Shown one piece after another: positions 25,685 through 45,539 of a DNA stretch of 64,000 nucleotides. Where the stretch lies: IMG/VR virus record IMGVR_UViG_3300005613_000001, positions 186,001-250,000 of that record, one strand, 5' to 3'. The notes beneath the pieces were generated by a model. That model ran no database searches. It was not told where the DNA came from and saw nothing but the letters and a program-made list of their open reading frames with translations. The first letter of the stretch is position 1. Each line of letters starts with the position of its first letter. A program made the position numbers and the translations under genes.

Positions 25685-26152
25685 TTCAGGTTCTATAACT
25701 TTCGTTTCAATCACTGTTCCATTTCCTAAATCATCTACACTATCAACAAACTGGTCAAGGTTTTTCATTTCAATGAGACTCCAATGAGGATCATCTTCAG
25801 GGACATTCTCTGGTTTCGTCCAATAAAACTGCTCGAATTTATATTTATAGATTTTTTCAGCTACATCTTCCACCGACATGCCGGAATGTAAATCTTCCGC
25901 CATTTCTCCACACACCCTCAATGAATCACCTTCAACAGCGCCTCCTAATTTTCTCAGCAAGATAGCACATTCTTGAGCTTTATACGTATTCACCAGCAAA
26001 TTAAGAATATCGCGTTTTAAGTTGCCATCTACGAATTCAACAATAGCCGTATACTTAGCCATTGTTTGCCCTCGCTCGGGCTTATGATTTCTATTCACTT
26101 CAAAAAAGTGTTCATGAAAATTAGATTCATCAATTATCAGTTCTTCTGTCAT
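25661..26152 (-). CDS. Hypothetical protein
   Basis: Probable ATG at 26152 (MTEELIIDE), with GGAG upstream inside the dnaE 3' end. Confidence 0.55.
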   Translation of the reverse strand: MTEELIIDESNFHEHFFEVNRNHKPERGQTMAKYTAIVEFVDGNLKRDILNLLVNTYKAQECAILLRKLGGAVEGDSLRVCGEMAEDLHSGMSVEDVAEKIYKYKFEQFYWTKPENVPEDDPHWSLIEMKNLDQFVDSVDDLGNGTVIETKVIEPESEVPEGS

Positions 26153-28991
26153 TATTTTCTCCCCATTCCATAACGAACACACGGCTATCTCTCTCTTTGG
26201 GAGGTAGCATATGTCGCTTATGTCTTTGTGGGCTATCTAGTGTATATCCAAATTTAGTAGGCGGTTGAACCCTAATACGTAAAAGGTTAGCGCCTGTGAA
26301 TTCTTCTTCAAATCGTTCCCAATCATTGGCCCAGACAGTTACATATTGTCTTTCTCCATTACCATCTTCAACCCATATATTATAATTAAACCCCTTACCA
26401 TTTTTCCAATCTCTTTTTTTATGAGATACAACAACCACTTCTACAGGGCCAACAGTAGCACCATCCCGCATTTCTAACCGTAATTGAGAAAATGTGCAAC
26501 CTGTATAATCTGGGCTTTTCTCTAAAGGGTGGTTCCAAATGAATCCCAGATACTTAGTCTCCGCCGATTCAGGGGAAGTATAGATTTCTTCTAATTCTTT
26601 TGGAATATAAGTATCATCACTTGTAGGATCAAATTTATCAAATGTGAATGGATTTTCGTCTGCTTCCGCCTCTTTTTTAAGATATCCTTTGATGGATCTT
26701 TCTCGTTTGCCCCATAAAGTCTTTAATCTTTTCCATTTATTCAGATTCTTCTTTTGAACTTTCCCATATTTAGGACCAGGAGTGCGACATACTTCCTCAA
26801 CAATGTCATCTTCATCAAACAATTGTTGCCACAATTCTAAATTAGACTCATCAAACGTTGCCAATTCATCATGGTCAGCAAGTATTTCTTTCAACTCACT
26901 ATCATACCTATCCAAAGTTTTCTGGTATCTCTTCCCACGATCTATCCTATTTTTCTCCGCAGCCTTAAAGTTTTCGTAATATTTATACAATGTAACGGGA
27001 TCGCCCTCATCAAAAAGATTAAGACCCAAAAGCGGCTTGATAACTGTGGCATCTGTACCAAAGAATCTTAAGAACTGTTCAAGAGATGCATAGGGCTGTC
27101 CTTGAACAATTTTCTCAGCATTTGACTCACCCACCCCTTTGATATTTGAAAGTCCAAAATAAATCTTATCATCAGGCGAAGGCTCTTCATTCTCTTGGAT
27201 GATTGCAAATCTCACATTTGATTTACTAATATTGACTGGCTCTACGGGGATATCATGAATTACCGCCTCAGTTTTATACTCTCTAATTTTGTCCTCTTTT
27301 GTTTCACAGCTTAGAATACCAGCGTAGAATTCAAGTGGGTAATGGGCTTTTAGCCAAAGAAGTCTTGAGCTTACATAAGTGTAGGCTACCGCGTGGCTTT
27401 TGTTAAATCCATAAGCCGCGAATGCTTCAATTTGATCCCATAGGAATCTAGTATTTGCTGCTGCGGCTGTTTGGTGGATATTTTCTTTTGTGAGTTTGGA
27501 CGGATATTGAAGTTTATACAAATAAGCAACGTATCCCAGAGATTTAGCGTAAGCATTCTCCATACCTTCATAAAATGCATAATTCGCCACTTCTCGTTCT
27601 AATTCTTCAAATGAATCTTTATGGAGTCCAATCAGAGGCGTAACAACTTCTTTTGCATCTTTCGGGATTTCGGGCTCACAATCACGTACTAATATTTTAG
27701 CCCCATTTTCAAGAAACATCTCTTTATACTTACCAAAAATCTCAACCTTCTTCTTACTAATAGCCTTTCTCACTTTTTCAGTGTGACTATCAGGAACCCC
27801 ACCAATATATTGGAGAACCTTCATAACCTGTTCTTGATAAGCCATTACCCCGTAGGTATTCCCTAGAATACTTTCCATAGCTGGGTGTATCGTATATGGT
27901 TCTTCTCCCTTCTTTCTTTTTACATACTTCTCCGCCATGCCCATTCCCAACGGACCAGGGCGATATAAGGCTGTGTACGCTACCAAATCATCGAAACTTG
28001 TAACGCCTCCTTGTTTTACCAATGATCTTATTCCAGGGGAATCAAATTGGAACACGCATTTTAAATCCCCCTTGTTTGCCATTGCAATCGCTTTGGCATC
28101 ATCTAGATAAGCCGTATCTGACCAATCCCGTTGTCCAGGTAATGCGCAGATTGAATCCAAACCATGACGAGCTTTCACTAATTGACAAATTCTACCAATT
28201 TGTTCCAAGTTCGTAATTACAAGAAGATCAAATTTTACCAGACCCAATGGCCCAAGCTCCTGTGCATTCAATCCCTCAACAAAGGCAGAGGTAATTTGTT
28301 CAGCCCTATCAACCACAAGGGGAACAAAATTACCAAGAGGTTTATTAGAAATAATCAAACCCGCAGCATGCTTGCCCATGCTCTTATTGCGATTTGTGAG
28401 CTTTCTAGCCGCATTGTAAATATCAGGATTCGCTTCACAAAACTCTGCAAGGGCAGGATTTAATCGCAGTGCGTCTTCCCAAGTAACCGCATCACCCTCT
28501 TCATCTTTATCTACTAAATATTTGGTAATTGCCACCATTTCATCCCGACTCTTACCATAAACCTTAGCAATATCAATAAGAGAGCTACGCATACCAAACG
28601 TATTATAACTGCCGATATTGCAAACCCGTTCTGGACCGAAGGCATTAGGTGCCCATTCCTCCTTCAAATAATCTCGTATTGTCTTGTGGAAGTCTACATC
28701 TACATCAGGCATATCCCCATCAAATTCAAAAACAGGCTTCTCATTAATATCAAAATCAGGAACCAAATTTAAAAGATAAGCTACCAAGAGATTGTTTTGA
28801 TTAACAGGATAACGGATTTTCTTTTCTTGAAACTCATCGTATAAATCAACAAAATATTGAGCTTCATTCTTGGTTTTTATAGCCTTAATCTCCTCAGACA
28901 ATCGCCCCTTGTGTAGATCATCCTCTAAACCCCGCCTCTTTAAAGCGCTAGCACACAAATAAATCAGTCTATCTTGGTAGTTCATAAGCAT
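26130..28991 (-). CDS. dnaE: DNA polymerase III alpha (DnaE), C-terminal catalytic polypeptide of a split enzyme
   Basis: MPDVDVDF catalytic motif, GKHAAGLII, KFDLL, VFQFDS, ALYRPGP, YQEQVM, YGFNKSHA, GLSNIKGVG, C-terminal OB fold; no PHP domain; start probably 28991 or 28985. Confidence 0.92.
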   Translation of the reverse strand: MLMNYQDRLIYLCASALKRRGLEDDLHKGRLSEEIKAIKTKNEAQYFVDLYDEFQEKKIRYPVNQNNLLVAYLLNLVPDFDINEKPVFEFDGDMPDVDVDFHKTIRDYLKEEWAPNAFGPERVCNIGSYNTFGMRSSLIDIAKVYGKSRDEMVAITKYLVDKDEEGDAVTWEDALRLNPALAEFCEANPDIYNAARKLTNRNKSMGKHAAGLIISNKPLGNFVPLVVDRAEQITSAFVEGLNAQELGPLGLVKFDLLVITNLEQIGRICQLVKARHGLDSICALPGQRDWSDTAYLDDAKAIAMANKGDLKCVFQFDSPGIRSLVKQGGVTSFDDLVAYTALYRPGPLGMGMAEKYVKRKKGEEPYTIHPAMESILGNTYGVMAYQEQVMKVLQYIGGVPDSHTEKVRKAISKKKVEIFGKYKEMFLENGAKILVRDCEPEIPKDAKEVVTPLIGLHKDSFEELEREVANYAFYEGMENAYAKSLGYVAYLYKLQYPSKLTKENIHQTAAAANTRFLWDQIEAFAAYGFNKSHAVAYTYVSSRLLWLKAHYPLEFYAGILSCETKEDKIREYKTEAVIHDIPVEPVNISKSNVRFAIIQENEEPSPDDKIYFGLSNIKGVGESNAEKIVQGQPYASLEQFLRFFGTDATVIKPLLGLNLFDEGDPVTLYKYYENFKAAEKNRIDRGKRYQKTLDRYDSELKEILADHDELATFDESNLELWQQLFDEDDIVEEVCRTPGPKYGKVQKKNLNKWKRLKTLWGKRERSIKGYLKKEAEADENPFTFDKFDPTSDDTYIPKELEEIYTSPESAETKYLGFIWNHPLEKSPDYTGCTFSQLRLEMRDGATVGPVEVVVVSHKKRDWKNGKGFNYNIWVEDGNGERQYVTVWANDWERFEEEFTGANLLRIRVQPPTKFGYTLDSPQRHKRHMLPPKERDSRVFVMEWGENNDRRTDN

Positions 28992-29031
28992 AAATATAAT
29001 TGATTCTCTATAAATCGTCAAGGGAGACAAT

Positions 29032-29793
29032 ATGAAACGAGCATTATTAGTTGGTATAAATAATTACCAGGAACCAGGAAGTGATTTGTCAGGCTGTTTA
29101 AACGATGTGGCATTCATGCAAGCCCATATTCGCAAATATGGATTTGAAGAAATGCAAACGCTTAAAAACAGCCAAGCAACTAAGAACAATATATTGACCG
29201 CACTCACCAATTTAGTTGATAGTTCCGAGGCGGGAGATAAAATTCTATATTACCACAGCGGTCACGGAACTCGCGTGGTAGATGGCTTTGATGGAGATGA
29301 AACAGACAGCATGGATGAATGCCTTGTCTCCTACGATCACGATTGGATGGAACCGCTTCGTGACGACCTTATTGCCAAAGCAATCAGTGGCATCCACCCA
29401 AAAGCACGCCTCTATTTAATTATAGACACCTGCCACAGCGGGACTATCACTGATATTATATCAAATGGGAAAATAAAATCTATCCCAATGCCACCAGAAA
29501 TGGAAGAATATGCTTTACGAAAGGAATTAAAAGTCAAAAGAGATGTTCGCCCTAAAACATTAAACCATATTCTTTTATCAGGATGCAAACCCCATGAATA
29601 CAGCTATGAAGCAGTAGTAGATGGGAAAATCAGAGGATTAATGACATGGGGTTTTATTAAAACCACACAGCGAAGAAAGCCCTGGAATAGAGTGATTTCA
29701 GCCGTTAGAAAACAAGTTACCAGACAACAACCAGGACAGCATCCTGTGTTGGCGGGGAAACCTAGACTTAGAAAAGAATTAATATTTAAGTAA
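29032..29793 (+). CDS. Caspase-family (C14, metacaspase-like) cysteine protease
   Basis: KRALLVGINNY, LSGCLND, YHSGHG and DTCHSG His-Cys dyad. Confidence 0.88.
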   Translation: MKRALLVGINNYQEPGSDLSGCLNDVAFMQAHIRKYGFEEMQTLKNSQATKNNILTALTNLVDSSEAGDKILYYHSGHGTRVVDGFDGDETDSMDECLVSYDHDWMEPLRDDLIAKAISGIHPKARLYLIIDTCHSGTITDIISNGKIKSIPMPPEMEEYALRKELKVKRDVRPKTLNHILLSGCKPHEYSYEAVVDGKIRGLMTWGFIKTTQRRKPWNRVISAVRKQVTRQQPGQHPVLAGKPRLRKELIFK

Positions 29794-29807
29794 CCCTAAA
29801 TTAAGTT

Positions 29808-30461
29808 ATGATTGTAGCTACGTATTTAACAGATTCTCACAAACAACTCTACGAGGAGTTTTTTGAACCGTCTGCTACTAAAAATGGGTGGGAAATCTAC
29901 AAAGTGGAAGGGCCGCAGGTTGGGTGCGGGCACTTTGGCGAGCCAGATTGGCCGGAAATGATGAGGCGGAAAGCTCGGGCAATGTATGATGCTATATGTA
30001 CTTACCCAAATGAAATCATACTATATGCCGATTGCGACATATATTTTGCCCGAGACTTCAACTGTAAGAAGCTTCTGGGAGATAACCTCTTGGCAGCCCA
30101 GGTAAGCGACAGAAGAGAAATGTGTGCAGGCTTAATGATAATTAATTGCACGCAAGAAATTAAAAGGATGTATAGAAAAATATATCGCTCTAAGAGATTC
30201 TATCAGCCAGGGAATCTAATGAGCGATCAAGATGCATTAAATCACTTTGTAAAAAAAGATAAAATCCCTCGCAAACTCATACCTAGACATCTATTTTGGT
30301 GTCCAGCTATTGTGAAGCGATGGGAGAGATGGCAAGAAGTGGATTCAATTGAACAAATTCAACCTATACCTAAAACTATACTAGCTGCCCATGCTAATTG
30401 GTGTAGGGGTCTTGAATTAAAAAAGGAAATTTTAAACTACGTGAAACAATGCATAAATTAA
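29808..30461 (+). CDS. Nucleotide-diphospho-sugar transferase (GT77-like)
   Basis: LYADCDIYF DxD, CAGLM, SDQDALN, AHANW. Confidence 0.7.
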   Translation: MIVATYLTDSHKQLYEEFFEPSATKNGWEIYKVEGPQVGCGHFGEPDWPEMMRRKARAMYDAICTYPNEIILYADCDIYFARDFNCKKLLGDNLLAAQVSDRREMCAGLMIINCTQEIKRMYRKIYRSKRFYQPGNLMSDQDALNHFVKKDKIPRKLIPRHLFWCPAIVKRWERWQEVDSIEQIQPIPKTILAAHANWCRGLELKKEILNYVKQCIN

Positions 30462-31042
30462 AACACACTCACATGAGAACTAAAAGGAATTCGCCAGGAC
30501 TCCATAAGCTCTGTAATTCGATCCCAGAAAAACACAGAAATCTTCTTGTAGAAATTGGAAGTTTCTACGGAGAATCCACAGCAATCTTTGCAGGGCACTT
30601 TAAACAAGTAATCGCAATTGATCCTTGGGATTTCAAAGGCTGCAACGAATTAAATAAGGGTTCAAAGAATAGCAGCGAGAAGCTAATCACAGGAAAAATG
30701 GCTGAGGAGCGATTTGACGAAAATGTAGGCAAAATAGAAAATATTAAAAAAATCAAAGCATACGACCATGATGTAGTTGACTCTTTTGAAGACAACTCCA
30801 TCGATTGCATCTATATTGACAGCATACACACTTTTGAAGCGTGTGGGCTCACGATATTAAGATGGTGGCCCAAAGTTAAAAACTATGGATACATAGCGGG
30901 ACACGATTTTACGCCAATGTGGCCGGGTATCCAAAAAGTGGTAAAAATAATAGCACAAATGACAAAACAAAGAATGCGCCGATTTAAAGGGGATTGTAGT
31001 TGGCTACTACAAAAAAGAGTTTTCACCCCGCATCAAGTATAA
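30449..31042 (+). CDS. Class I SAM-dependent methyltransferase (Methyltransf_24-like)
   Basis: VEIGSFYGES, AIDPW, IYIDSIH, IAGHDF. Confidence 0.8.
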   Translation: MHKLKHTHMRTKRNSPGLHKLCNSIPEKHRNLLVEIGSFYGESTAIFAGHFKQVIAIDPWDFKGCNELNKGSKNSSEKLITGKMAEERFDENVGKIENIKKIKAYDHDVVDSFEDNSIDCIYIDSIHTFEACGLTILRWWPKVKNYGYIAGHDFTPMWPGIQKVVKIIAQMTKQRMRRFKGDCSWLLQKRVFTPHQV

Positions 31043-31424
31043 CTTCTAACAAATTCTTATCTCCCACCTTCTCATAAACCAAACTTGTAATTGCCATTCT
31101 CTGAACCTCATATCCCACCTTTGCTAAATCTTCAGTCATGTATTGTGCAGCGACACTATTGCAAGAATGTACCACCACCTTTTTAACATCGGGCTTATTT
31201 ACCGCCATCCATCTAACAACTTCGCTACCTGTATTCGGATGAGCAGGATCAACATAGACCTCCCCACCTAAATCATGGTCCAAAAAAACAATGTCCCACG
31301 GTTCCTCAGCCGCCTCTAATACTTCAATACATTCAGAGGCGGTTGAGGTAACCGTGGCGTATGGCGCAAAGCTGCGGAATAACCTTGTTCTCTCAGGCGA
31401 ATCATCAAGCCATAACACATTCAT
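31023..31424 (-). CDS. Cyclic-phosphate-processing receiver-domain protein
   Basis: LWLDD, IVFLDHDLG, TGSEVVRWM, VHSCN. Confidence 0.7.
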   Translation of the reverse strand: MNVLWLDDSPERTRLFRSFAPYATVTSTASECIEVLEAAEEPWDIVFLDHDLGGEVYVDPAHPNTGSEVVRWMAVNKPDVKKVVVHSCNSVAAQYMTEDLAKVGYEVQRMAITSLVYEKVGDKNLLEVILDAG

Positions 31425-32233
31425 TCTTTTCTATTCCTTCTCTTAAACAACATCATACCAAAAAATGCCGTCAAAAGCAAAGCGATCTGGGATGGTTCCG
31501 GCACTCTACCCATCAAGTTATCATTTCCACATTCCATTGTGAAGTGCGTATAAAACTCATCGCCCGCTGACGCCAAGTATGGCCCATCATCCATGAATCC
31601 CAAATCAATACCTCTAATTCGATAGTGCCAAGTATGGTGACCATCTGCGCCTGTGAAGCCTGTCTCGGCATCAGTTAAATTACTCTCGTACAAGAAAGCC
31701 CCTTCATCTATTGCCTGTCCACCGGAAACATAGCGGACAGGATTCGCTATATCCATCTCCGGTCGTGTTGCTAAACTTAGAATTGAATCGGAACCAATTT
31801 CATAAACTGTGTATTGGTTGCTATCAAAATTCAATCTAATGGCATAATTATAACCAAAGATGTTTGGCATTGTGCCACTACCTGTTCCCGCCGCTGCATC
31901 ACCATAAATTGGTTTCTGACGAGCGATAAAAATGTCGCCCGAATCGTACCCCTCATAGCCCGTCGCAAAGTTAAAACCCCCAACCATACCAAGTTGTCGC
32001 CCTTCTAGGAAGACTGACTCTAAATCATACTTTTGTGTGCCGTGACTATCAGGTTCTACTTCCTGATCTTCGTGAATCCCCTCTCTGGCATCATCGCCAG
32101 CCCACCAGGGATCGTGGGGGCGGGCACCATAGGCAATTGAGTCATCAAAGATAGTAATGTCAGTGGCTTCGCCAAGTGCGTAGCCCGAGGCCATTGCCCA
32201 ACACACCACAAAAATTGTAAAGAACCTCATCAC
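31421..32233 (-). CDS. PEP-CTERM sorting-domain surface protein
   Basis: N-terminal signal peptide; C-terminal VPEPSQIALLLTAFFGMMLFKRRNRKE (VPEP, TM helix, basic tail). Confidence 0.9.
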   Translation of the reverse strand: MMRFFTIFVVCWAMASGYALGEATDITIFDDSIAYGARPHDPWWAGDDAREGIHEDQEVEPDSHGTQKYDLESVFLEGRQLGMVGGFNFATGYEGYDSGDIFIARQKPIYGDAAAGTGSGTMPNIFGYNYAIRLNFDSNQYTVYEIGSDSILSLATRPEMDIANPVRYVSGGQAIDEGAFLYESNLTDAETGFTGADGHHTWHYRIRGIDLGFMDDGPYLASAGDEFYTHFTMECGNDNLMGRVPEPSQIALLLTAFFGMMLFKRRNRKE

Positions 32234-32301
32234 ACACCTCCATTCGAGTAGTGGAAGAAAAAACGATCCATTTTTACATCATACCACAAATAGGCTGACT
32301 G

Positions 32302-33156
32302 TTAAGCAAATTTCTTGCGAAGCCACCATCTTTTGAGTTGCTGCAATGGATGGCGATTACCCCCCCATAGAAAGCCCCTCTTTAACATGTGGCGGTAGGC
32401 GTCAAACTGAAAATAATAGGGGGCTTGCGACACTTCACCCCGCCCCAAAAGAATTTTAAGAGCCTCAGCCGAAGCGACTCCGCTACACAACTGACAAGCT
32501 AGAGAAGCTGAGGGGCCTTTGCCGGTATCAGGTTCTACCTTATCAAAATCTAAATAGGTAATATGAGTATGCGAAGGTGCAAGTCCTACAGCAAATGCCA
32601 CAAGTTTATCCATATGATCCATTGAATCATTTAAATCAAAGTAATCATCAAATGACATACCTGTTGGGTGGAATGAAAGCCAGGCTGTACTAAAGCCCAC
32701 GGGGCCTGCTGTGACTGCCCAGATGCCCCTTTCACGCGCGGTGGCGAACAACAAGCGTCTAGCGTCAATAGAAAAGAAATCAATACCATCAACAAATAAA
32801 TCGGCATCATCAAGGAATCTAGAAACGTTGTCTTGCGAGATGGGTTCATGAAAAATGCGAAAATCAATATTAGGATTGATAGCCAGGGCCATATCAACCA
32901 TTGATTCAACTTTACTATGACCTATCGTAGCTGTTGTTGCTCCACACTGACGATTGAAATTAGCAACTTCAAATGTATCAGGATCAGCAATTGTAAATTT
33001 GCCAACCCCCAGGCGAGTCAAGGTAAGCAAATGAATACCCCCGACACCACCCATGCCAGCAATTGCTACCCGACTATTGCGAACAACACTCTGTTCATCT
33101 GAGGCGATCAAGCCCTGATTGCGGGCAAAAGCCTCTTCGTAAGACCAAGAATCCAT
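32302..33156 (-). CDS. ThiF/MoeB/E1-family adenylyltransferase
   Basis: VAIAGMGGVGG, ADPDTFEVANFNRQ, LFVDGID, ACQLCSG; start ATG 33156 (alternative TTG 33171). Confidence 0.85.
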   Translation of the reverse strand: MDSWSYEEAFARNQGLIASDEQSVVRNSRVAIAGMGGVGGIHLLTLTRLGVGKFTIADPDTFEVANFNRQCGATTATIGHSKVESMVDMALAINPNIDFRIFHEPISQDNVSRFLDDADLFVDGIDFFSIDARRLLFATARERGIWAVTAGPVGFSTAWLSFHPTGMSFDDYFDLNDSMDHMDKLVAFAVGLAPSHTHITYLDFDKVEPDTGKGPSASLACQLCSGVASAEALKILLGRGEVSQAPYYFQFDAYRHMLKRGFLWGGNRHPLQQLKRWWLRKKFA

Positions 33157-33479
33157 TTTAAGATTATCCAAATACTAAGCCCGGTAATGTATACTAAGAA
33201 CACCGGCCACCAAAAGAAAACAGCTTTTAGTAAAACGGGCAAATCGTACCTTATAAAATCACATGGGATATCTCGGGTGTCATAGAGAAACACGCCGGTA
33301 AAAAACAAAATGAATACCGGCCACCAGAAAACGTAAGTCGTAAATGTTTGCCACGCTATGCTTGGCATTTCTCTGACGGTCTGCCAAAATCCTTTTCTAT
33401 AGACAGACACTTGCCGATAGGCAAATGGGAACAGGAGTTGGTCGCCGTCTTTCTTGCGTTCCACGGTAATCCAGGGCAT
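33108..33479 (-). CDS. Membrane protein with a duplicated FWWPVF helix
   Basis: Two similar TM segments, VFWWPVFILFFTG and FFWWPVFLVYITG. Confidence 0.5.
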   Translation of the reverse strand: MPWITVERKKDGDQLLFPFAYRQVSVYRKGFWQTVREMPSIAWQTFTTYVFWWPVFILFFTGVFLYDTRDIPCDFIRYDLPVLLKAVFFWWPVFLVYITGLSIWIILKWILGLTKRLLPAIRA

Positions 33480-33898
33480 TCCTTAAACCACCATTTTAGA
33501 TTCCAATAGATAGGAAACAAAAACCAACCAACCGTCCAGGGTATGAAAAGCACAAGCCAAATCAGATGCCAAATAATAATGGCAATCCACACCTTGTCTG
33601 TATCAAAGCAAATTCTTTTGTTGTTTTCCTTTAATGCTTGATCTTGCTTACCCTTAGATATCCCTTCCCACCTTCCTAAAAACCACCACGGCGCAGTTTT
33701 ATTTTCTTCATGAGGCAAAACATGATTAAAATGTAAAGCATGACCTTTTTCATTTCTTACAATAAAGTGATAAGGCCATATTGGAGAATCTGAATTTACT
33801 CCAACAAGACTTTTTACTTTGCCCTTCATGAAAAGATAAAAAGTAGCAAAGAAACAATTACCATAAAATTCCTTTGGTATCTGCACGGCTCCCTCCAA
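33356..33898 (-). CDS. Hypothetical membrane protein
   Basis: 180-aa ORF with a Trp-rich TM segment; overlaps the next gene by 124 nt. Confidence 0.5.
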   Translation of the reverse strand: MEGAVQIPKEFYGNCFFATFYLFMKGKVKSLVGVNSDSPIWPYHFIVRNEKGHALHFNHVLPHEENKTAPWWFLGRWEGISKGKQDQALKENNKRICFDTDKVWIAIIIWHLIWLVLFIPWTVGWFLFPIYWNLKWWFKECPGLPWNARKTATNSCSHLPIGKCLSIEKDFGRPSEKCQA

Positions 33899-33931: not shown

Positions 33932-35005
33932 TTATACAACATTGGAGTTTGCATTCTTTTCAGCTTTTAACCTGAGATGACGCTGCCTCTTTCTTTCTAA
34001 ATCATGCTTACGACGGCACGATTCTCCACACAACTTGGCATATCTTCTTTTGGGTGTAAACTTCTTGCCACACCACACACAAATCTTCACTGCTGGTTCT
34101 GATTTCTGCTTCTGCCAATTATATTTTTCACGACACTTAACCGAACAATATTTTTGGTGACCTATGTGATTCTGGGCTGGTAAAAACTTGCTGCCGCAAT
34201 ACAAACACTCGTAGTATGGATCGTAGTCGGGATCATAATAATTTTTGAGATCCTGAATTGCTAATAGCAAAGCATAGCTTATGCTTCCCTCCGAGGTCTG
34301 CATTTCCTTGGCAAGCTTTCTTGTTCCTGTTTTCTCTTCTCCACACAATCCATAATGCATACAAAATATTTCCCGACGAGCTTCATCAGGAATAGAATGT
34401 TTTATATTCCTCTCTACCTCAGCTAAACAAGGGAAAATATCATTACCAAGAGGAAATTGGTTTGTAGACTCCACTTGTTGTTTTACCGCATGTAACGCAG
34501 GGAACCCTAATTCAATCTCACCAACCTGTTTAGCAGCCAACAAAAAGAGTATTCGTTTCTTGCTAAGAAACAACATCTCTGCCAGTTCATCAACAGTGAA
34601 GTGGTACTCGCCAAGATTTTCAGTATCAATTAACTTTCTAAGATTCCTCCAAACATTTCGTGGAATGACAATAAGATTGGAAGCGCGGATGGTCTCAATA
34701 ACCGCACGACGGGCAAGGGAATAAGCATATCCCTGAAGAGATCGCGCCTTATCTTCAGACCATGTATCTACAGCCTGAATGACGGCGCATTGAGCAGTTT
34801 GAACTAGATCTTCAAAATCTGCTTTACAATGCTTTGAGCGATATTTATACGCAACTCTATAAGCGAGTCGCATAAGAGACTTAATGAGCCGCTGTCTTGC
34901 TTGCTCGTCGCCGGATTTCGCTTGGAAGAAATATTCTAGTGTCTGCCCGTTAAGAGACTCACAATCAGGGTCATTTAAGTATCCGAATACATTCGGATAA
35001 GCCAT
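33932..35005 (-). CDS. Sigma-70-family RNA polymerase sigma factor with two C-terminal zinc-finger repeats
   Basis: GDEQARQRLIKSLMRLAYRVAYKY, FEDLVQ (region 2); region-4-like HTH; CLYCG...YCSVKC and CVWCG...LCGESC. Confidence 0.8.
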   Translation of the reverse strand: MAYPNVFGYLNDPDCESLNGQTLEYFFQAKSGDEQARQRLIKSLMRLAYRVAYKYRSKHCKADFEDLVQTAQCAVIQAVDTWSEDKARSLQGYAYSLARRAVIETIRASNLIVIPRNVWRNLRKLIDTENLGEYHFTVDELAEMLFLSKKRILFLLAAKQVGEIELGFPALHAVKQQVESTNQFPLGNDIFPCLAEVERNIKHSIPDEARREIFCMHYGLCGEEKTGTRKLAKEMQTSEGSISYALLLAIQDLKNYYDPDYDPYYECLYCGSKFLPAQNHIGHQKYCSVKCREKYNWQKQKSEPAVKICVWCGKKFTPKRRYAKLCGESCRRKHDLERKRQRHLRLKAEKNANSNVV

Positions 35006-35348: not shown

Positions 35349-35984
35349 TTACCTAAGTTTATTTGGAACCACCGGCTGGTTCATCCACAATTGATCGGTT
35401 TGAACATGGTGAGGACGAACCCACTTGCCAACGTGATTTTGGAAATCGTTATAGCCAAAACCTTCAACAGTCCTAATCACATAGCCTTCCTTCGTATCAC
35501 CAAAAGCCGAAGCTTCTGTCAACGGGTTTAATCTACTAAATTTTTCTTTCGACCACAACCCCACAAATTCTACAGGCACAACTTCTAACCCTAAGTCGCT
35601 AGCCATTTGTACAGTATCCGGCCAAGAAAGGCAAAAGTTGTGTTCATTATAAACTGCAAAAACGTAAAAGTACGCAGTTAGCCGATCATAAAAAATACTG
35701 TGCTTGGCGAACATGTTTTCTCCACAAATTCGCCAACCTTGAGGAATTAAATGCGCAATACCACCCCATAATCCCTTCACTAAATTCCTTGATGGGTGAT
35801 TTCTAGAATCTAGGCTGCGGGCATGGAAATGGTCACGATACATAGACGTATTTTCACCGTCCAGTTTTTCAGTTAAGACAACCTCTTTACCTTGAAACTG
35901 CTGGGTGCTTTCCAATATCCGATCTGCCGAGCTTGTCCCCGGTGACCACGGAAAGTGAAACGTCTTAGGGTATTTGAATAACAT
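35349..35984 (-). CDS. ATP-dependent RNA ligase family protein
   Basis: TEKLDGEN motif I, CGENMF, FYVFAV, EGYVIR, KWVR. Confidence 0.85.
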   Translation of the reverse strand: MLFKYPKTFHFPWSPGTSSADRILESTQQFQGKEVVLTEKLDGENTSMYRDHFHARSLDSRNHPSRNLVKGLWGGIAHLIPQGWRICGENMFAKHSIFYDRLTAYFYVFAVYNEHNFCLSWPDTVQMASDLGLEVVPVEFVGLWSKEKFSRLNPLTEASAFGDTKEGYVIRTVEGFGYNDFQNHVGKWVRPHHVQTDQLWMNQPVVPNKLR

Positions 35985-36041: not shown

Positions 36042-36725
36042 GTGATAGTAAGTAGGACACATAAATTTATCTTTCTTAAAAGCGTTAAAACAGCAGGGAC
36101 TAGTATTCAAGTGGCTTTGTCTCCCTTTTTAGTCCCAGGAGTAGATTGTGGATGTGGGGCTAGATGGTGTTCAACAAAATGCCCCTTTGTGGGAGGGAAC
36201 TGCTATCAACTTCTCAATCCAAAGAAGACCCCGCCGACACGCGAACAACTGCCGGGACACTATCGCAGAACACAATTCTTTTCTCCCCACGAAAGTTTAA
36301 AAAGCCTAGTAGCGACTCTACCTCAAGATGAAATTAAACAATACTTTAAATTTGTGTTTGTAAGAAACCCTTTTGATAGATTAGTCTCTCGTTATTGGCA
36401 TCTTGGAGGGCCTAAAAAATATGATAGCTTTAACCAATTTGTTTTAAAATACCCATGTCTGCCTGGGAATTTCATATATCGTACATGGTGTAGATACAAT
36501 GAAATAAAAGTTGATTTCATTGGGAGATATGAAAACTTAAAGACAGATTTTAATTATATTTGTGATACTATCGGCTTGCCGAGAACTGAACTTCCCAGAT
36601 GTAGAGGCCAGCACCGGAAGGATAAAAAACATTACACAGAATATTATACAAAAGAATTGCGGGAATTAGTAGAAAGTTACTGTGCTGAGGATTTAAAACA
36701 ATTTAATTATAAATTTGGGGACTAA
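36042..36725 (+). CDS. Sulfotransferase family 2 protein
   Basis: FIFLKSVKTAGTSI, FVFVRNPFDRLVSRY, DFIGRYENL; AGGAG RBS, TAAATA at 36007-36012. Confidence 0.85.
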   Translation: MIVSRTHKFIFLKSVKTAGTSIQVALSPFLVPGVDCGCGARWCSTKCPFVGGNCYQLLNPKKTPPTREQLPGHYRRTQFFSPHESLKSLVATLPQDEIKQYFKFVFVRNPFDRLVSRYWHLGGPKKYDSFNQFVLKYPCLPGNFIYRTWCRYNEIKVDFIGRYENLKTDFNYICDTIGLPRTELPRCRGQHRKDKKHYTEYYTKELRELVESYCAEDLKQFNYKFGD

Positions 36726-37507
36726 ATATCAAGACCCGGCTCTTGCGGAAGTTCTAATCCAAGCACTTCCTTGAAAGATTCCTTCCATCTAACCTTGGGC
36801 TCATTCTTTAATTGCTCATATATTTCTTTAATTCGTTCGTCTGTCTGTCCAACTTCAATTCTGGCAATCGCTTCTTCACTTGTATCTGGCTGAACACGGT
36901 TGCGAACATCATTCATCTTTCCAATCCAAATACTGTCCGTTACAATAGGCTCAAGCCTATAAAATAAAGCAGCCACATTATCAGAATCTAACATCGGCTC
37001 TGCACTAACACTGGTCCTGAAACCGTTGCCAAATGCTAACGCCAAAGAAGCCAATCGTTCCTCAAACTTTGGGGCTACCGGCTCCCAATAAGATAAAATC
37101 TCATCATCCATTGCCCCAATGGTGAACCTAAAGAGGATTTGATCCTTGTATTCTTTAAACTTTGTACATATCTCCGCGATGCATTCCAGGTGAGGTTTGC
37201 TCACTATTAAAACATCATTGCCCGCCTCAAAAAGATTTTCTAGAACAGCCATACACGCATCAAAACCTTTAGGCGTAATATCATGCGTGGTGGGGAACAT
37301 TACAGTTCCATCAAATTTCTTTCTTTTCTTACGTACTTCTTTTGCACGAACCCTATGGTACGTAGTTCCCCATTCTTCTAAATTATTGATAAGTTTGAAC
37401 TTTTTCGCTTTAGCTCTTGCATAACAATACCTACAGCGATGGGGACACCCCAACACGCAATTAATGCTTGCAACAGCCCACTCACGGGTTCCGCTAATCA
37501 TTGCCAT
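36722..37507 (-). CDS. Radical SAM protein (SplB-like / phage radical SAM)
   Basis: CPHRCRYC (CxxxCxxC), SVSAEPM, WIGKMN. Confidence 0.75.
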   Translation of the reverse strand: MAMISGTREWAVASINCVLGCPHRCRYCYARAKAKKFKLINNLEEWGTTYHRVRAKEVRKKRKKFDGTVMFPTTHDITPKGFDACMAVLENLFEAGNDVLIVSKPHLECIAEICTKFKEYKDQILFRFTIGAMDDEILSYWEPVAPKFEERLASLALAFGNGFRTSVSAEPMLDSDNVAALFYRLEPIVTDSIWIGKMNDVRNRVQPDTSEEAIARIEVGQTDERIKEIYEQLKNEPKVRWKESFKEVLGLELPQEPGLDI

Positions 37508-42113: not shown

Positions 42114-43244
42114 ATGAAGGTACTAGTATCAGGCTGCTTCGATCTAATCCACAGCGGCCATATCCAATTTCTTAAAGAAGCCGCTGAATACGGCGATCTA
42201 TATGTCTCCATTGGATCAGATCAAACAATCCAAGAACTAAAAAATAGAACTCCCATCTATAACGAGCAAGAACGCCTCTTTATTATGGAGTCTATCAAAT
42301 ATATTAAAAAAGCTTTTATCGCTCAGGGGTCTGGGACACTAGATTTCTTAAACGAATTAAAACAATTAAAGCCAGGGGCGTTTGTGGTCAATTCTGATGG
42401 TCATTCCCAAGAAAAGGAAGACCTGTGCAAAGAGCTAAAAATTAAATATATTGTCCTCAATCGGTCCCCCTACAAAACTCTTCCCGCTCGCAGTACATCA
42501 AAATTGCTTGGCGAAATAGAAATGCCCTATCGTATTGATTTGGCAGGAGGCTGGCTGGATCAACCGTGGGTTTCCAATATGGGGCACGGGCCTGTTATCA
42601 CCATCTCATTAGAAGCCTCACATATTTTCTTTAGAAGAAGCGGAATGGCTACCTCCACCAGAGAAAAAGCCATTAAATTATGGGGCTCTGGGATTCCTTA
42701 TGGTGACTACGAAGAAAATGCAAAACTCCTATTTTCTTATGATAATTTCCCCGATAAAGAGTTTGTTTCTGGTTCTCAAGATACATTGGGAATTGTCATG
42801 CCAGGAGTTAATAAATTAGACTATTCCGGTAAGTATTGGCCGGAAGCTATAGAGTCTATTGTAGATGATGACACTGCGCGTTGGTTAGAAGACCACATTC
42901 GCTTAGTCCCCTTATATCCAAGACCAAAAGACTATTCTGTGCTGTCCAATACCAATATTAAAGAAGAATATGTTAGAGGTTTAGCCTTCAATGCCCACAA
43001 AGTTTGGAAAGCAATTGAATTAAAACATGCCAGCATGTTAGGGCTACACGTAGAAAAGTGTTTCGGTGCCCAAGTGGCTATGTTCCCCAATATGATAACT
43101 CATAGAATAGCCAAAATAATCAAAAAATACAGAAATAAAATATTGGGAGTTAAAATATCAGGGGCGGGTGGGGGCGGATATCTAATCTTCATCACCGATC
43201 AAGATATAGAAAATTCAATTAAAATTAAAGTGAGAACTCAATAA
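42114..43244 (+). CDS. Cytidylyltransferase-like nucleotidyltransferase fused to a GHMP sugar kinase (HddA-like)
   Basis: SGCFDLIHSGH (HIGH motif); RIDLAGGWLD, RSGMATS, SGSQD, KISGAGGGG. Confidence 0.85.
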   Translation: MKVLVSGCFDLIHSGHIQFLKEAAEYGDLYVSIGSDQTIQELKNRTPIYNEQERLFIMESIKYIKKAFIAQGSGTLDFLNELKQLKPGAFVVNSDGHSQEKEDLCKELKIKYIVLNRSPYKTLPARSTSKLLGEIEMPYRIDLAGGWLDQPWVSNMGHGPVITISLEASHIFFRRSGMATSTREKAIKLWGSGIPYGDYEENAKLLFSYDNFPDKEFVSGSQDTLGIVMPGVNKLDYSGKYWPEAIESIVDDDTARWLEDHIRLVPLYPRPKDYSVLSNTNIKEEYVRGLAFNAHKVWKAIELKHASMLGLHVEKCFGAQVAMFPNMITHRIAKIIKKYRNKILGVKISGAGGGGYLIFITDQDIENSIKIKVRTQ

Positions 43245-44153: not shown

Positions 44154-45539
44154 TTATATATCCTCAATGGGCACAGGATCAATATTATTAAACCTTAACT
44201 TCATTGAGCGACCGCCCCTTGATTCACTAAGGAAACGCGAGAAAAGAAGATCGTGCTTAATGGGATCAACGTCGGTAATACCCAAACAATAACAGGTCAA
44301 TGCCCCTACGGCTGATCCTCTTCCGGGGCCAACTGCCTCTGATCCATCTCCCCAGCCTAGTAATCTAGGGAAGGCAATTCTAGCCTCATCTGTCATCTGT
44401 TTTTGCATTAAGAAGTAAGTAGAGAATCCTTTTCGGCATATCAATTCATATTCTTCCTTAATCCGATTTAAATACCTATTTTCCGTGGGCAACCTTCTAG
44501 CTTTAACTCCCTCTATGATTACCTCTTTGAACATTTCATCAGCATCAGGAAACTGGGGAAGTTTAATACTACGGTCTAATTGTACGCCTTTTGCTTTCTC
44601 GCATATTACAACCGTATTTTGTTTAGCTTGTCTAAAGAGATCGTCAGGGATTACTTGGCTATACTTCTTGAGCCACATTTGGTTGAGTTCATCTTCTGAC
44701 TTCATCCAAAGGTTAGTATCCTGTAGTTCAAAGAAATCCGCATCAGGATTGGCTCTCATTTTCTCTTCAATTTCAGCCATTGTTGTGTTGGTTTGAAGCA
44801 TCAACATCAATCGCTGCATCAAAGCATCTTCTTCACGGCAATAGTGACAATCATTTGTGACAACGAGAGGAATGCCATACCTGTCGTGTGCTTTAATAAT
44901 AAATTTATCAAAAGGTGTTTGTTTGTCAAAATCCAAAAGCATCATTTCCAAGTAAAAATTATCTGGAAACATCTGCTGATATTTTTCAACCATTGCAAAT
45001 CCAGCTTCATCCCCACCCTCGCAATGAAAGCCATCAAATGCTTGTCCTATCTCGCCATTATAACAGCCTGACGAGAATACGATTCCCTCTTTGTATTTCA
45101 GTAATTGCTCATGATTCACACGGGGTCGCTTTGGACGACCGCCCTGACCATTAATCCAAGCCCAAGAACTTAAATTAACCAGATTTGCGTATCCAATCTC
45201 ATTATAAGCTATAGCTAATAAATGGAAGCTTTTACGAAGATAAAGCTTTTCATTCTCAGTGAGGTTAGATTGGAAATCAGCATACTCATCCTTATTCCTT
45301 ACACCGGGTTGCATTGGGTTGAGATATAATTCACATGCGAAAACAGGATGAATGTCGTGTTTTTCACAAGTCTTAATCTGACGGGGGATAACCCCCATTT
45401 GCCCGTGGTCCGATATACAAAGAAACTTCTGATTTACCTGCTGAGAGTATTCTGCGTACTCTTCAGGGTGAGCGTAGCCATCAAGAAGTGAGAAGTGGCT
45501 ATGGCGGTGAAGGTGCTCAAAACCCACAATATCAATCAC
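44154..45539 (-). CDS. dnaE: DNA polymerase III alpha (DnaE), N-terminal PHP-domain polypeptide of a split enzyme
   Basis: HLHRHSHFSLLDG, SDHG, ACELY, NDCHY, GPGRGSAVG, LGITDVDP, LFSRFL; ends before the PDxDxDF motif. Confidence 0.92.
   Translation of the reverse strand: MIDIVGFEHLHRHSHFSLLDGYAHPEEYAEYSQQVNQKFLCISDHGQMGVIPRQIKTCEKHDIHPVFACELYLNPMQPGVRNKDEYADFQSNLTENEKLYLRKSFHLLAIAYNEIGYANLVNLSSWAWINGQGGRPKRPRVNHEQLLKYKEGIVFSSGCYNGEIGQAFDGFHCEGGDEAGFAMVEKYQQMFPDNFYLEMMLLDFDKQTPFDKFIIKAHDRYGIPLVVTNDCHYCREEDALMQRLMLMLQTNTTMAEIEEKMRANPDADFFELQDTNLWMKSEDELNQMWLKKYSQVIPDDLFRQAKQNTVVICEKAKGVQLDRSIKLPQFPDADEMFKEVIIEGVKARRLPTENRYLNRIKEEYELICRKGFSTYFLMQKQMTDEARIAFPRLLGWGDGSEAVGPGRGSAVGALTCYCLGITDVDPIKHDLLFSRFLSESRGGRSMKLRFNNIDPVPIEDI

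What the first reader, a model, noticed from the sequence alone, without database searches (positions are those of the whole stretch)
31421..33156. Phage-encoded PEP-CTERM surface protein plus ThiF partner: hijacking the host exosortase pathway
Seen: a complete PEP-CTERM protein (signal peptide, ~220-aa domain, VPEP-TM-basic tail) directly downstream of a ThiF enzyme. Both look more GC-rich than their flanks by eye, and no exosortase is present in the window. Established: PEP-CTERM proteins are exosortase substrates of biofilm/EPS-forming diderms, and to my recollection ThiF proteins of this type occur in PEP-CTERM-associated loci. Inference: the phage captured part of such a locus and displays its own protein on the infected cell through the host exosortase (receptor masking, aggregation), possibly glycosylated by the phage GTs. 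It also points to the host group.
Basis: partly seen in the sequence, partly recalled or inferred. Interest (0 to 1): 0.75.

Follow-up and report, generated by a model that had tools for sequence, protein, structure and literature searches.

The report
Megaphage carries exosortase substrate plus ThiF
A 527-kb marine phage carries, side by side, an intact secreted protein that only a host exosortase could process and an E1-like (ThiF) enzyme of the type that sits beside such proteins in bacterial exosortase loci, so the phage probably remodels the surface or matrix of the infected cell.

Summary
Window 31421-32230(-) encodes a 269-aa protein with a signal peptide, a conserved acidic beta-sandwich core and a VPEP/TM/KRRNRK tail (TIGR02595 25.4 bits, cut-off 16). 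Window 32302-33156(-) encodes a 284-aa ThiF/E1-like enzyme (PRK08223/NF006077 422 bits, cut-off 266). The 527-kb phage genome has no exosortase. An independent assembly is 100% identical over 20.9 kb, so the region is not chimeric.

In bacteria this ThiF subfamily is paired or fused with a nitroreductase-fold protein. It lies with the exosortase-associated FeeM acyltransferase and a DevBCA-like exporter. A PEP-CTERM gene, often PepA-like, lies within 3 kb in 29 of 79 loci. The subfamily co-occurs with exosortase (Fisher p = 2.6e-6).

"One captured locus" is not supported. The ThiF groups with Planctomycetota. The cargo family was not found in 401 Planctomycetota and is stand-alone in all six flanked bacterial loci. 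The nitroreductase partner is missing, and both genes are close to phage composition. A second, unrelated phage acquired the same cargo family independently, without a ThiF.

Host identity, expression, sorting and the benefit to the phage are untested. This is a new variant of a known kind, a phage gene for a host-sorted surface protein. Interest is moderate to high.

The parts
31421..32230 (-). Gene for a 269-aa secreted PEP-CTERM protein. It belongs to an uncharacterised family of stand-alone 250-290-aa exosortase/archaeosortase-tagged beta-sandwich proteins, called A1 here.
   Evidence: Full-length homologs are 35-56% identical, and all 26 columns invariant in the 26-sequence alignment (phage protein included) carry the family residue in the phage protein. 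There are 762 cluster representatives at E<=1e-30. No Pfam or NCBIfam model covers the core.
32174..32230 (-). Signal-peptide-like N-terminus (MRFFTIFVVCWAMASGYA|LGE).
   Evidence: Hydropathy window above 1.6 over aa 1-20. Homologs all start with a comparable signal peptide. No dedicated signal-peptide predictor was available.
31424..31504 (-). PEP-CTERM sorting tail: VPEP, a hydrophobic helix (SQIALLLTAFFGMMLF) and a basic cluster (KRRNRKE).
   Evidence: TIGR02595 covers aa 244-268 at 25.4 bits against a cut-off of 16. The genome-wide search gives 28.8 bits. Hydropathy.
32231..32305 (-). ThiF/PEP-CTERM intergenic region. It holds a promoter-like site (TTAACA, 16 nt, TGgTATGAT; 32305-32278) and a GGAGG Shine-Dalgarno (32241-32237).
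   Evidence: The consensus scan as a whole is not above shuffles (12 found, 10.6 expected), so only the position is suggestive.
32302..33156 (-). Gene for a 284-aa ThiF/E1-like adenylyltransferase of the PRK08223 (NF006077) subfamily.
   Evidence: It is 60-66% identical to bacterial orthologs. The 82 columns invariant across the 22-sequence alignment (phage included) include GxGGxGG, NFNRQ and DGIDFF. The nearest solved structures (TcdA, MoeB, UBA5, PaaA) align only over the ATP-binding half.
31023..31424 (-). 133-aa receiver-like protein (cREC_REC). Its ATG overlaps the PEP-CTERM stop codon (ATGA).
   Evidence: PF20274 at 58.5 bits against a cut-off of 27. Sequence. The overlap suggests co-transcription and translational coupling; the function is unknown.
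33108..33479 (-). 123-aa predicted membrane protein of unknown function. It overlaps the ThiF start and lies in the same gene string downstream of a sigma-70-family gene (33932-35005).

Best explanation
These are two intact, cell-derived auxiliary genes in a genuine 527-kb marine megaphage. They sit together because both belong to the host's PEP-CTERM/exosortase surface-matrix pathway.

Gene 1 encodes an acidic DOMON/CBM9-like beta-sandwich protein. It would be exported by Sec, held in the inner membrane by its PEP-CTERM helix, and then cleaved and sorted by the host's exosortase, because the phage has none.

Gene 2 encodes an E1-like adenylating enzyme orthologous to the ThiF of bacterial exosortase/EPS loci. 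In bacteria that ThiF works with a nitroreductase-fold partner, a FeeM-type N-acyl-amino-acid synthase and a DevBCA-like exporter, next to PepA-like PEP-CTERM proteins.

The phage therefore supplies its own cargo plus one enzyme of the accessory module, and relies on the host for the exosortase and the remaining enzymes. The likely outcome is a change in the surface or extracellular matrix of the infected cell, such as adhesion or aggregation, masking of receptors, or matrix turnover.

Shown: gene identity and integrity, phage context, absence of an exosortase, and the cellular ThiF/exosortase/PEP-CTERM linkage.
Inferred: dependence on the host exosortase, functional coupling of the two phage genes, and the physiological benefit.
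The pair was not traceable to one donor locus.
For: Identity and integrity.

Phage context:
- The record is a virus record with a CheckV completeness of 100%.
- PHROG hits, 59 tRNAs and a terminase large subunit.
- An independent, identical assembly.
- No exosortase in the genome.

Cellular linkage of this ThiF subfamily:
- A nitroreductase-fold partner is adjacent or fused in 58 of 80 loci, 11 of them fusions.
- FeeM/TIGR03694 'PEP-CTERM/exosortase system-associated acyltransferase' and a DevBCA-like exporter lie nearby.
- An exosortase lies within 10 kb in 12 loci, and 31 of 32 genomes carry one.
- In 301 Desulfobacterota, 15 of 17 ThiF-positive genomes have an exosortase against 86 of 284 ThiF-negative ones, p = 2.6e-6.
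- A PEP-CTERM gene lies within 3 kb in 29 of 79 loci and within 500 bp in 16. Of the 32 such proteins, 18 hit floc_PepA. Genomes tested carry as few as 9-11 PEP-CTERM genes.

Adjacency in the phage:
- The phage has about 731 genes, one PEP-CTERM gene and one PRK08223 ThiF. The chance of adjacency is about 0.27%.

Recurrent phage acquisition of the cargo family:
- L103, a 132-kb T4-like phage, has its own member, which branches apart from the window's protein.
Against: - The cargo family and this ThiF are not partners in cells. No A1 member lies near any of 80 ThiF loci. Six flanked A1 loci lack a ThiF. Only 2 of 15 A1-bearing Desulfobacterota have the ThiF.
- The ThiF-linked bacterial PEP-CTERM proteins show no detectable homology to the phage cargo (hhalign probability <=1.1%; BLASTP).
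- The phage lacks the ThiF's near-obligate partner and the FeeM and DevBC genes.
- The second phage carries the cargo without a ThiF.
- A promoter-like site between the genes allows independent expression.
- There are no expression data; no RNA run was listed.
- The host is unidentified, so the presence of an exosortase in it is assumed.
Confidence: 0.6

Rival explanations
1. The two genes are unrelated passengers that are adjacent by chance. The PEP-CTERM protein is an independent gene for a host-sorted surface protein. The lone ThiF has been put to another job, such as activating a phage-encoded small protein, nucleotide or tRNA modification, or counter-defence.
For: - The cargo family and the ThiF do not co-occur or neighbour each other in cells.
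- L103 has the cargo without a ThiF.
- The ThiF lacks its partner in the phage.
- The two genes have different phylogenetic affinities.
- A possible separate promoter lies between them.
- A second, distant ThiF-like ORF elsewhere in the genome shows that the phage uses E1-like folds more than once.
Against: - Chance adjacency is about 0.27% for two single-copy genes among about 731.
- The ThiF scores as a full-length PRK08223 member well above its cut-off and keeps every residue invariant in the 22-sequence alignment.
- That subfamily is specifically linked to exosortase and PEP-CTERM genes in five phyla.
Confidence: 0.2
2. Sabotage rather than display. The phage protein is a decoy substrate that saturates or blocks the host exosortase. 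A partner-less ThiF diverts or poisons the accessory pathway. Together they shut down matrix or floc assembly so that progeny escape, or so that a matrix-based barrier is removed.
For: - The phage carries only one enzyme of a multi-enzyme module.
- The tail (PEPSQIALLL...) differs from the tails seen next to bacterial ThiFs.
- The cargo is highly expressed by design: a strong SD and its own promoter-like site.
Against: - The whole conserved core of the cargo is preserved (every column invariant in the family alignment). A decoy would only need the tail.
- The ThiF keeps all catalytic-region motifs.
- There is no direct evidence.
Confidence: 0.1
3. The tail serves simply as a C-terminal membrane anchor in a host without an exosortase. 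The protein would be a periplasm-facing inner-membrane protein of the infected cell, for example for superinfection exclusion, and no sorting occurs.
For: - No exosortase in the phage, and the host is unknown.
- Pfam's PEP-CTERM model did not report the tail at E<=0.01.
Against: - The VPEP motif, the helix and the basic cluster are all retained, and TIGR02595 is passed.
- The closest homologs all carry sorting tags that are swapped between PEP-CTERM, VPDSG-CTERM and PEF-CTERM variants, the hallmark of sortase-type cargo.
- The neighbouring ThiF is of the exosortase-locus type.
Confidence: 0.07
4. Assembly artefact or bacterial contamination inserted into the phage contig.
For: The GC content of the two genes is slightly above the phage mean.
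Against: - A second assembly is 100% identical over 20,855 bp across both junctions.
- The genes are about 45% GC, against 56-70% in their nearest cellular homologs.
- Phage genes flank them on both sides, and the stop of the PEP-CTERM gene overlaps the start of the next phage gene.
Confidence: 0.02

Closest known systems
PEP-CTERM/exosortase protein-sorting system (TIGR02595 / PF07589 substrates; EpsH/Xrt exosortases)
   Same: The protein has the full tripartite sorting signal (VPEP, a TM helix, a basic cluster) at the extreme C-terminus, plus an N-terminal signal peptide. It passes the TIGR02595 cut-off. Homologs carry interchangeable sorting tags.
   Different: It is encoded by a phage that has no exosortase. 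Processing is not shown, and the host is unknown.
PepA, the flocculation-associated PEP-CTERM protein (NF033554) of Zoogloea and Aquincola (PMC9850573)
   Same: It is a small stand-alone secreted PEP-CTERM protein. In bacteria, PepA-like genes are the commonest PEP-CTERM neighbours of the PRK08223 ThiF (18 of 32), the same arrangement as in the phage.
   Different: The phage protein matches floc_PepA only in the tail (16.9 bits, cut-off 80). Its core shows no profile-level similarity to the ThiF-linked proteins.
PRK08223 / PRK14851 / PRK14852 / Rv1355c-type ThiF (E1-like) proteins
   Same: The alignment is full-length at 422 bits, with 60-66% identity to Planctomycetota orthologs and all conserved motifs.
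   Different: The phage copy stands alone. The cellular ones are paired or fused with a double nitroreductase-fold protein, and in PRK14852 also with a FeeM domain. The substrate of the family is unknown. The closest solved E1-like enzymes are TcdA, MoeB, UBA5 and PaaA.
Prophage-encoded sortase substrates of Gram-positive bacteria (LPXTG surface proteins such as SasX; from my own knowledge, not checked here)
   Same: The concept is the same: a phage gene encodes a surface protein that the host's sorting enzyme must process.
   Different: The sorting system differs (exosortase in diderms). The carrier is a lytic-type megaphage rather than a temperate phage. An accessory-pathway enzyme is carried alongside.

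Membership tests
PEP-CTERM sorting domain (TIGR02595 / PF07589) | HMM score above the curated cut-off | tested here: met
   TIGR02595 scores 25.4 bits against a cut-off of 16 and 28.8 bits in the genome scan. Pfam PF07589 was not reported at E<=0.01.
PEP-CTERM sorting domain (TIGR02595 / PF07589) | Pro-Glu-Pro motif, then a hydrophobic helix, then a basic cluster, at the extreme C-terminus | tested here: met
   The tail is VPEP-SQIALLLTAFFGMMLF-KRRNRKE, aa 243-269 of 269.
PEP-CTERM sorting domain (TIGR02595 / PF07589) | N-terminal signal peptide for export | tested here: met
   A hydrophobic N-terminus, aa 1-20, ends in GYA|LGE. Homologs align with signal peptides. No SignalP-type tool was available.
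PEP-CTERM sorting domain (TIGR02595 / PF07589) | An exosortase encoded in the same genome | tested here: not met
   PF09721 was not found in the 527-kb phage record. The host's enzyme would be required, and the host is unknown.
PEP-CTERM sorting domain (TIGR02595 / PF07589) | Cleavage and sorting by an exosortase | not testable with these tools
   This needs expression in an exosortase-proficient and an exosortase-deficient host, followed by mass spectrometry.
A1 family (uncharacterised stand-alone beta-sandwich PEP-CTERM proteins) | Full-length homology with the conserved motifs ITIxD, EDQEVEP, WDLE, SGDIF and HFTMECGNDNLMG | tested here: met
   Identity is 35-56% over 90-100% of the length. 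All 26 columns invariant in the alignment carry the family residue in the phage protein; one nearly invariant Trp (QxWDLE) is Tyr.
floc_PepA (NF033554) | Full-length HMM match above 80 bits | tested here: not met
   16.9 bits, tail only. hhalign against the ThiF-linked PepA-like groups gives a probability of <=1.1%.
PRK08223 (NF006077) ThiF/E1-like adenylyltransferase | HMM score above the curated cut-off, full length | tested here: met
   422.4 bits against a cut-off of 266; residues 6-287 align to profile positions 2-284 of 296.
PRK08223 (NF006077) ThiF/E1-like adenylyltransferase | Nucleotide-binding GxGxxG and the conserved Arg and Asp motifs of E1-like enzymes | tested here: met
   GMGGVGG, NFNRQ and DGIDFF are among the 82 columns invariant across the 22-sequence alignment, phage protein included.
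PRK08223 (NF006077) ThiF/E1-like adenylyltransferase | An adjacent or fused double nitroreductase-fold partner (empirical here: 58 of 80 loci) | tested here: not met
   A profile of the partner finds nothing in the phage genome.
PRK08223 (NF006077) ThiF/E1-like adenylyltransferase | Genomic association with exosortase and PEP-CTERM genes | tested here: met
   In the phage the next gene is a PEP-CTERM protein. For the cellular association.
PRK08223 (NF006077) ThiF/E1-like adenylyltransferase | Adenylation activity and substrate | not testable with these tools
   No member is characterised in the open literature searched. The predicted complex with a Gemmatales partner gave no answer.

The most novel reading that the evidence does not exclude
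The PRK08223 E1-like enzyme is a dedicated component of exosortase-dependent sorting. It would either activate a carboxylate on the cargo or, together with the FeeM, nitroreductase-fold and DevBCA proteins, make the exported acceptor or lipid to which the exosortase transfers PEP-CTERM proteins. The phage would then have assembled a minimal 'enzyme plus cargo' cassette from different donors. That would make it a natural pointer to the still unknown chemistry of the exosortase pathway, and a way for a phage to plant its own protein in the host matrix.
Probability: 0.2. Interest if true: 0.8.

Novelty: new variant of a known kind. Interest (0 to 1): 0.6.

Why it matters
Exosortase sorting is widespread in biofilm- and floc-forming diderms. 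Its chemistry is unresolved: it is not known what the cargo is attached to, or which accessory enzymes are needed.

Two results here bear on that question.
1. A specific ThiF/E1-like subfamily, with a nitroreductase-fold partner, is tied to exosortase genomes and to PepA-like cargo genes across five phyla. I found no mention of this link in the open literature searched.
2. Phages have picked up exosortase cargo at least twice independently, once next to that ThiF.

If the phage protein is really sorted, this is the diderm counterpart of phage-encoded sortase substrates. It would mean phages can edit the extracellular matrix of environmental bacteria. It also gives a compact two-gene system with which to test what the ThiF does.

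Tried and rejected
- Single-protein scans of IMG/VR found no relatives. Profile scans found one cargo homolog (L103) and no PRK08223-type ThiF. GenBank phages hold neither.
- Homology between the phage cargo and the ThiF-linked bacterial PEP-CTERM proteins was looked for and not found: the HMM matches only the tail, hhalign gives <=1.1%, and BLASTP finds nothing.
- The fold could not be assigned. Foldseek against the PDB had no hit at E<=0.001. VIA-align gave Z<=5.4 to DOMON/CBM-like sandwiches. These, with the Atlas CBM9/EB_dh hits, are suggestive only.
- The predicted complex of the phage ThiF with the Gemmatales nitroreductase-fold partner gave no answer (score 0.00). It is not evidence either way.
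- Host identification failed. The ThiF points to Planctomycetota. The cargo's nearest relative (P0002, 56% identical, on a 1.9-kb contig of 62% GC) could not be placed: its neighbouring gene has no match in 401 Planctomycetota, and the Atlas result was uninformative.
- No RNA run was listed.
- The chimera hypothesis was rejected.
- The literature held no paper on phage PEP-CTERM proteins with exosortase, or on a ThiF-exosortase link. One 2026 preprint mentions a PEP-CTERM domain in a Dehalococcoides virus-like element.
Full report
**Context**

The window is bases 186001-250000 of a single-contig 527,112-bp IMG/VR virus record that CheckV rates as 100% complete.
- It has 40.8% GC, about 731 ORFs of at least 60 aa, and 59 tRNA genes including amber and ochre suppressors.
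- Several large ORFs match phage-only PHROG families, and there is a terminase large-subunit N-domain.
- The only listed sequencing run that holds part of the region is a marine metagenome.
- The object is therefore a marine megaphage.

**Observation**

Both ORFs are present on the minus strand.

The downstream ORF (31421-32233 in the ORF list):
- It most likely starts at the ATG at 32230, which is preceded by GGAGG at a 6-nt spacing. This gives 269 aa.
- It has exactly two hydrophobic segments, aa 1-20 (signal-peptide-like, ending GYA|LGE) and aa 247-263.
- It ends VPEP-SQIALLLTAFFGMMLF-KRRNRKE, and the mature part is strongly acidic.
- TIGR02595 is passed at 25.4 bits against a cut-off of 16. 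Pfam's PEP-CTERM model did not report it at E<=0.01.
- It is the only PEP-CTERM match in the phage genome.

The upstream ORF (32302-33156 from its ATG; 284 aa):
- It is a ThiF-family protein, with PF00899 at 152 bits.
- It is a full-length member of NF006077/PRK08223, at 422 bits against a cut-off of 266.

Other points:
- No exosortase (PF09721) is encoded anywhere in the phage.
- The two genes are 45.8% and 45.3% GC, the 93.5th and 91.6th percentile of phage genes. Their GC3 is at the 90th and 66th percentile.
- An independently assembled ENA contig of 238,844 bp is 100% identical over 20,855 bp across the whole neighbourhood. This removes the chimera objection.

**The PEP-CTERM protein**

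- It is homologous over its full length (35-56% identity) to a family of 250-290-aa proteins that consist of a signal peptide, a roughly 220-aa core and a sorting tail.
- The alignment shows strongly conserved motifs: ITIxD, EDQEVEP, QxWDLE, SGDIF, and HFTMECGNDNLMG just before VPEP. The phage protein carries the family residue in all 26 columns that are invariant in that alignment.
- An exhaustive profile search finds 762 cluster representatives at E<=1e-30.
- No Pfam or NCBIfam model covers the core.
- Members carry PEP-CTERM, VPDSG-CTERM, VPLPA-CTERM or archaeal PEF-CTERM tags. That is the pattern expected of sortase-type cargo.
- An AlphaFold2 model (pLDDT 72, core 80-97) is a beta-sandwich. 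Foldseek finds no significant solved relative. VIA-align gives only Z<=5.4, to DOMON and CBM-like sandwiches: dopamine beta-hydroxylase DOMON, Sas6, the ethylbenzene dehydrogenase gamma subunit and the cellobiose dehydrogenase cytochrome domain. The Atlas structure search lists CBM9 and EB_dh families. A ligand- or glycan-binding sandwich is therefore plausible but not established.
- In six bacterial loci with flanks the gene stands alone among unrelated housekeeping genes.
- Taxonomically the family is mainly in Thermodesulfobacteriota and Acidobacteriota. Full-length members occur in about 20 of 401 Desulfobacterota sampled and in 0 of 401 Planctomycetota sampled.

**The ThiF**

- The closest relatives (60-66% identity) are bacterial, and the named ones are Gemmatales, Pirellulales and other Planctomycetota.
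- In a maximum-likelihood tree of 68 sequences the phage protein sits inside the Planctomycetota group, next to Gemmataceae and Isosphaeraceae sequences. Support is SH-aLRT 88, which is not decisive.
- The 82 columns invariant across the 22-sequence alignment, which includes the phage protein, contain the nucleotide-binding glycines and the NFNRQ and DGIDFF motifs.
- Solved E1-like enzymes (TcdA, MoeB, UBA5, PaaA, ThiF) align only with the ATP-binding half. The substrate-handling half is specific to the family, and the substrate is unknown.

**Gene neighbourhood of this ThiF in cells**

I called ORFs in 80 bacterial loci (flanks up to 10 kb) and clustered them.
- The ThiF is followed by, preceded by, or fused to a roughly 360-aa double nitroreductase-fold protein in 58 loci, 11 of them fusions of 670-700 aa. 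This protein resembles the Acg/Rv3131 family and the C-terminal halves of Rv1355c and PRK14851.
- FeeM-type acyltransferases occur in 42 and 20 loci (two clusters). One cluster is TIGR03694, named 'PEP-CTERM/exosortase system-associated acyltransferase'. A DevB/DevC/ATPase-type exporter is also common. PRK14852 is a FeeM-ThiF-nitroreductase fusion model.
- An exosortase lies within the fetched flank in 12 loci, and 31 of 32 ThiF-bearing genomes encode one.
- In an even sample of 301 Desulfobacterota genomes, 15 of 17 genomes with the ThiF have an exosortase, against 86 of 284 without it. The odds ratio is 17 and Fisher's p is 2.6e-6.
- A PEP-CTERM-tailed ORF of 260-390 aa lies within 3 kb of the ThiF/nitroreductase unit in 29 of 79 loci, and within 500 bp in 16, across five phyla. 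Of these 32 proteins, 18 match the floc_PepA model. Two of the ten scanned individually exceed its cut-off: L044 at 121 bits and L076 at 84.7 bits.
- Some of these genomes have only 9-11 PEP-CTERM genes in 4.5-8 Mb, so this proximity is far beyond chance.
- PepA is the floc-forming PEP-CTERM protein of Zoogloea and Aquincola (PMC9850573).
The open literature I could search does not describe the link.

**What the phage has and lacks**

- Profiles of the nitroreductase-fold partner, FeeM, DevB, DevC, MMPL and DUF1302 neighbours find nothing in the phage genome. Only the ThiF is present, plus a distant second ThiF-like ORF 12 kb before the window.
- The phage cargo shows no detectable homology to the PEP-CTERM proteins that neighbour the ThiF in bacteria.
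- The nearest cellular homologs have 56% GC (cargo, P0002) and 70% GC (ThiF, Gemmatales), against about 45% in the phage. Both genes are long-resident and close to phage composition.
- The cargo's nearest relative, P0002, groups with it at 99% support and shares its unusual tail (PEP[SA]QI[AS]LLL...RR.RKE). It lies on a 1.9-kb contig of 62% GC that I could not assign to a phylum.
- The two genes therefore cannot be traced to one captured locus. The ThiF points to Planctomycetota and the cargo does not.

**Is the adjacency meaningful?**

- With about 731 genes, one PEP-CTERM gene and one PRK08223 ThiF, random placement makes them neighbours with a probability of about 0.27%.
- This ThiF subfamily neighbours PEP-CTERM genes in cells, so I take the phage adjacency as functional, by joint selection if not by joint capture.
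- The genes share a strand in a string: sigma factor, two small membrane proteins, ThiF, cargo, cREC_REC.
- The cargo stop overlaps the cREC_REC start (ATGA). A promoter-like site (TTAACA, 16 nt, TGgTATGAT) and a strong SD precede the cargo gene. The promoter scan as a whole is not above shuffles.

**A second phage**

- In 2.9 million IMG/VR contigs a profile scan found one other viral contig with a member of the cargo family. This is L103, a 132-kb record with gp32 and dNMP-kinase genes and about 35% GC. Its member is 259 aa, has all the family motifs, and passes Pfam PEP-CTERM.
- That record has no exosortase and no ThiF; it is 66% complete.
- In the family tree its protein branches away from the window's, nearest to P0088 and P0111, so phages acquired this cargo at least twice.
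- GenBank phages hold neither gene.

**Mechanism proposed**

- Shown: an intact exosortase-type cargo gene and an intact exosortase-locus-type E1-like enzyme gene sit together in a phage without an exosortase.
- Inferred, step 1: the cargo is exported and is cleaved and sorted by the host exosortase.
- Inferred, step 2: the ThiF plugs into the host's FeeM / nitroreductase-fold / exporter module, or replaces a host copy during infection, to support the same pathway.
- Inferred, step 3: the result is an altered cell surface or matrix.
- By analogy with the E1-like enzymes TcdA and PaaA (ATP-dependent activation of a carboxylate followed by condensation), and with FMN-dependent dehydrogenases of the nitroreductase fold, the cellular module may convert an N-acyl amino acid into an exported lipid-like product. 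This is speculation.
- A predicted complex between the phage ThiF and the Gemmatales partner gave no answer.
- No RNA run was listed, so expression is untested.

**Verdict**

The pathway assignment and the dependence on a host exosortase hold. The single-locus capture, the host inference and the proposed phenotypes do not follow from the data.
- This is a new variant of a known kind: a phage gene encoding a substrate of a host sorting enzyme.
- The by-product that may matter more is a previously undescribed ThiF / nitroreductase-fold / PepA link in exosortase systems.

Noticed in passing
bacterial loci L007-L086 (for example L007:9944-13561, L044:10013-12904, L056:9932-12915): There is a conserved cellular module of a PRK08223 ThiF plus a double nitroreductase-fold protein (fused in 11 loci), with FeeM/TIGR03694, a DevBCA-like exporter and a PepA-like PEP-CTERM gene. 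It tracks exosortase-bearing genomes (p = 2.6e-6). I found no description of this link in the open literature searched.
   Followed up: yes
L103:7350-8129 (IMGVR_UViG_3300031111_000007): A second, unrelated 132-kb T4-like phage (gp32, dNMP kinase, about 35% GC) carries its own member of the same PEP-CTERM cargo family. It was acquired independently, and that record has no ThiF and no exosortase.
   Followed up: yes
window 31023-31424 (-): A cREC_REC receiver-like gene has a start codon that overlaps the PEP-CTERM stop (ATGA). An RNA-ligase gene lies at 35349-35984. A possible link to the cargo gene is unexplained.
   Followed up: partly
genome G000:C1:173534-174220 (-), 12 kb before the window: A second, very divergent ThiF/E1-like ORF (about 228 aa; 27 bits against the PRK08223-type profile).
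   Followed up: no
genome G000:C1:55058-167979 and 309025-321170: There are 59 tRNA genes in two clusters, including amber (CTA) and ochre (TTA) suppressor tRNAs at 167265-167425 and two 4-base-anticodon calls. There are none in the window itself.
   Followed up: partly
window 57869-59062 (-): An IS-type transposase (phrog_506, 409 bits) lies inside the phage genome.
   Followed up: no
window 29032-31042 (+): A caspase-like Peptidase_C14 gene, a nucleotide-diphospho-sugar transferase and a Methyltransf_24 gene form a plus-strand trio convergent with the cargo string. A sulfotransferase (36042-36725), a radical SAM gene (36722-37507), a cytidylyltransferase-like gene (42114-43244) and a heptose-kinase-like gene (60781-62163) lie nearby. 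The region is rich in envelope- and glycan-type genes.
   Followed up: partly
window 26130-29030 (-) and 44154-45539 (-): There is a DNA polymerase III alpha-like gene (966 aa), and a separate 461-aa ORF that matches only the first third of a 1190-position phage DNA polymerase profile.
   Followed up: no
window 33108-33898 (-): Two ORFs of 123 and 180 aa, both with hydrophobic segments, overlap by 124 nt in different frames between the sigma-factor gene and the ThiF. Only the 123-aa one is called in the independent assembly.
   Followed up: no
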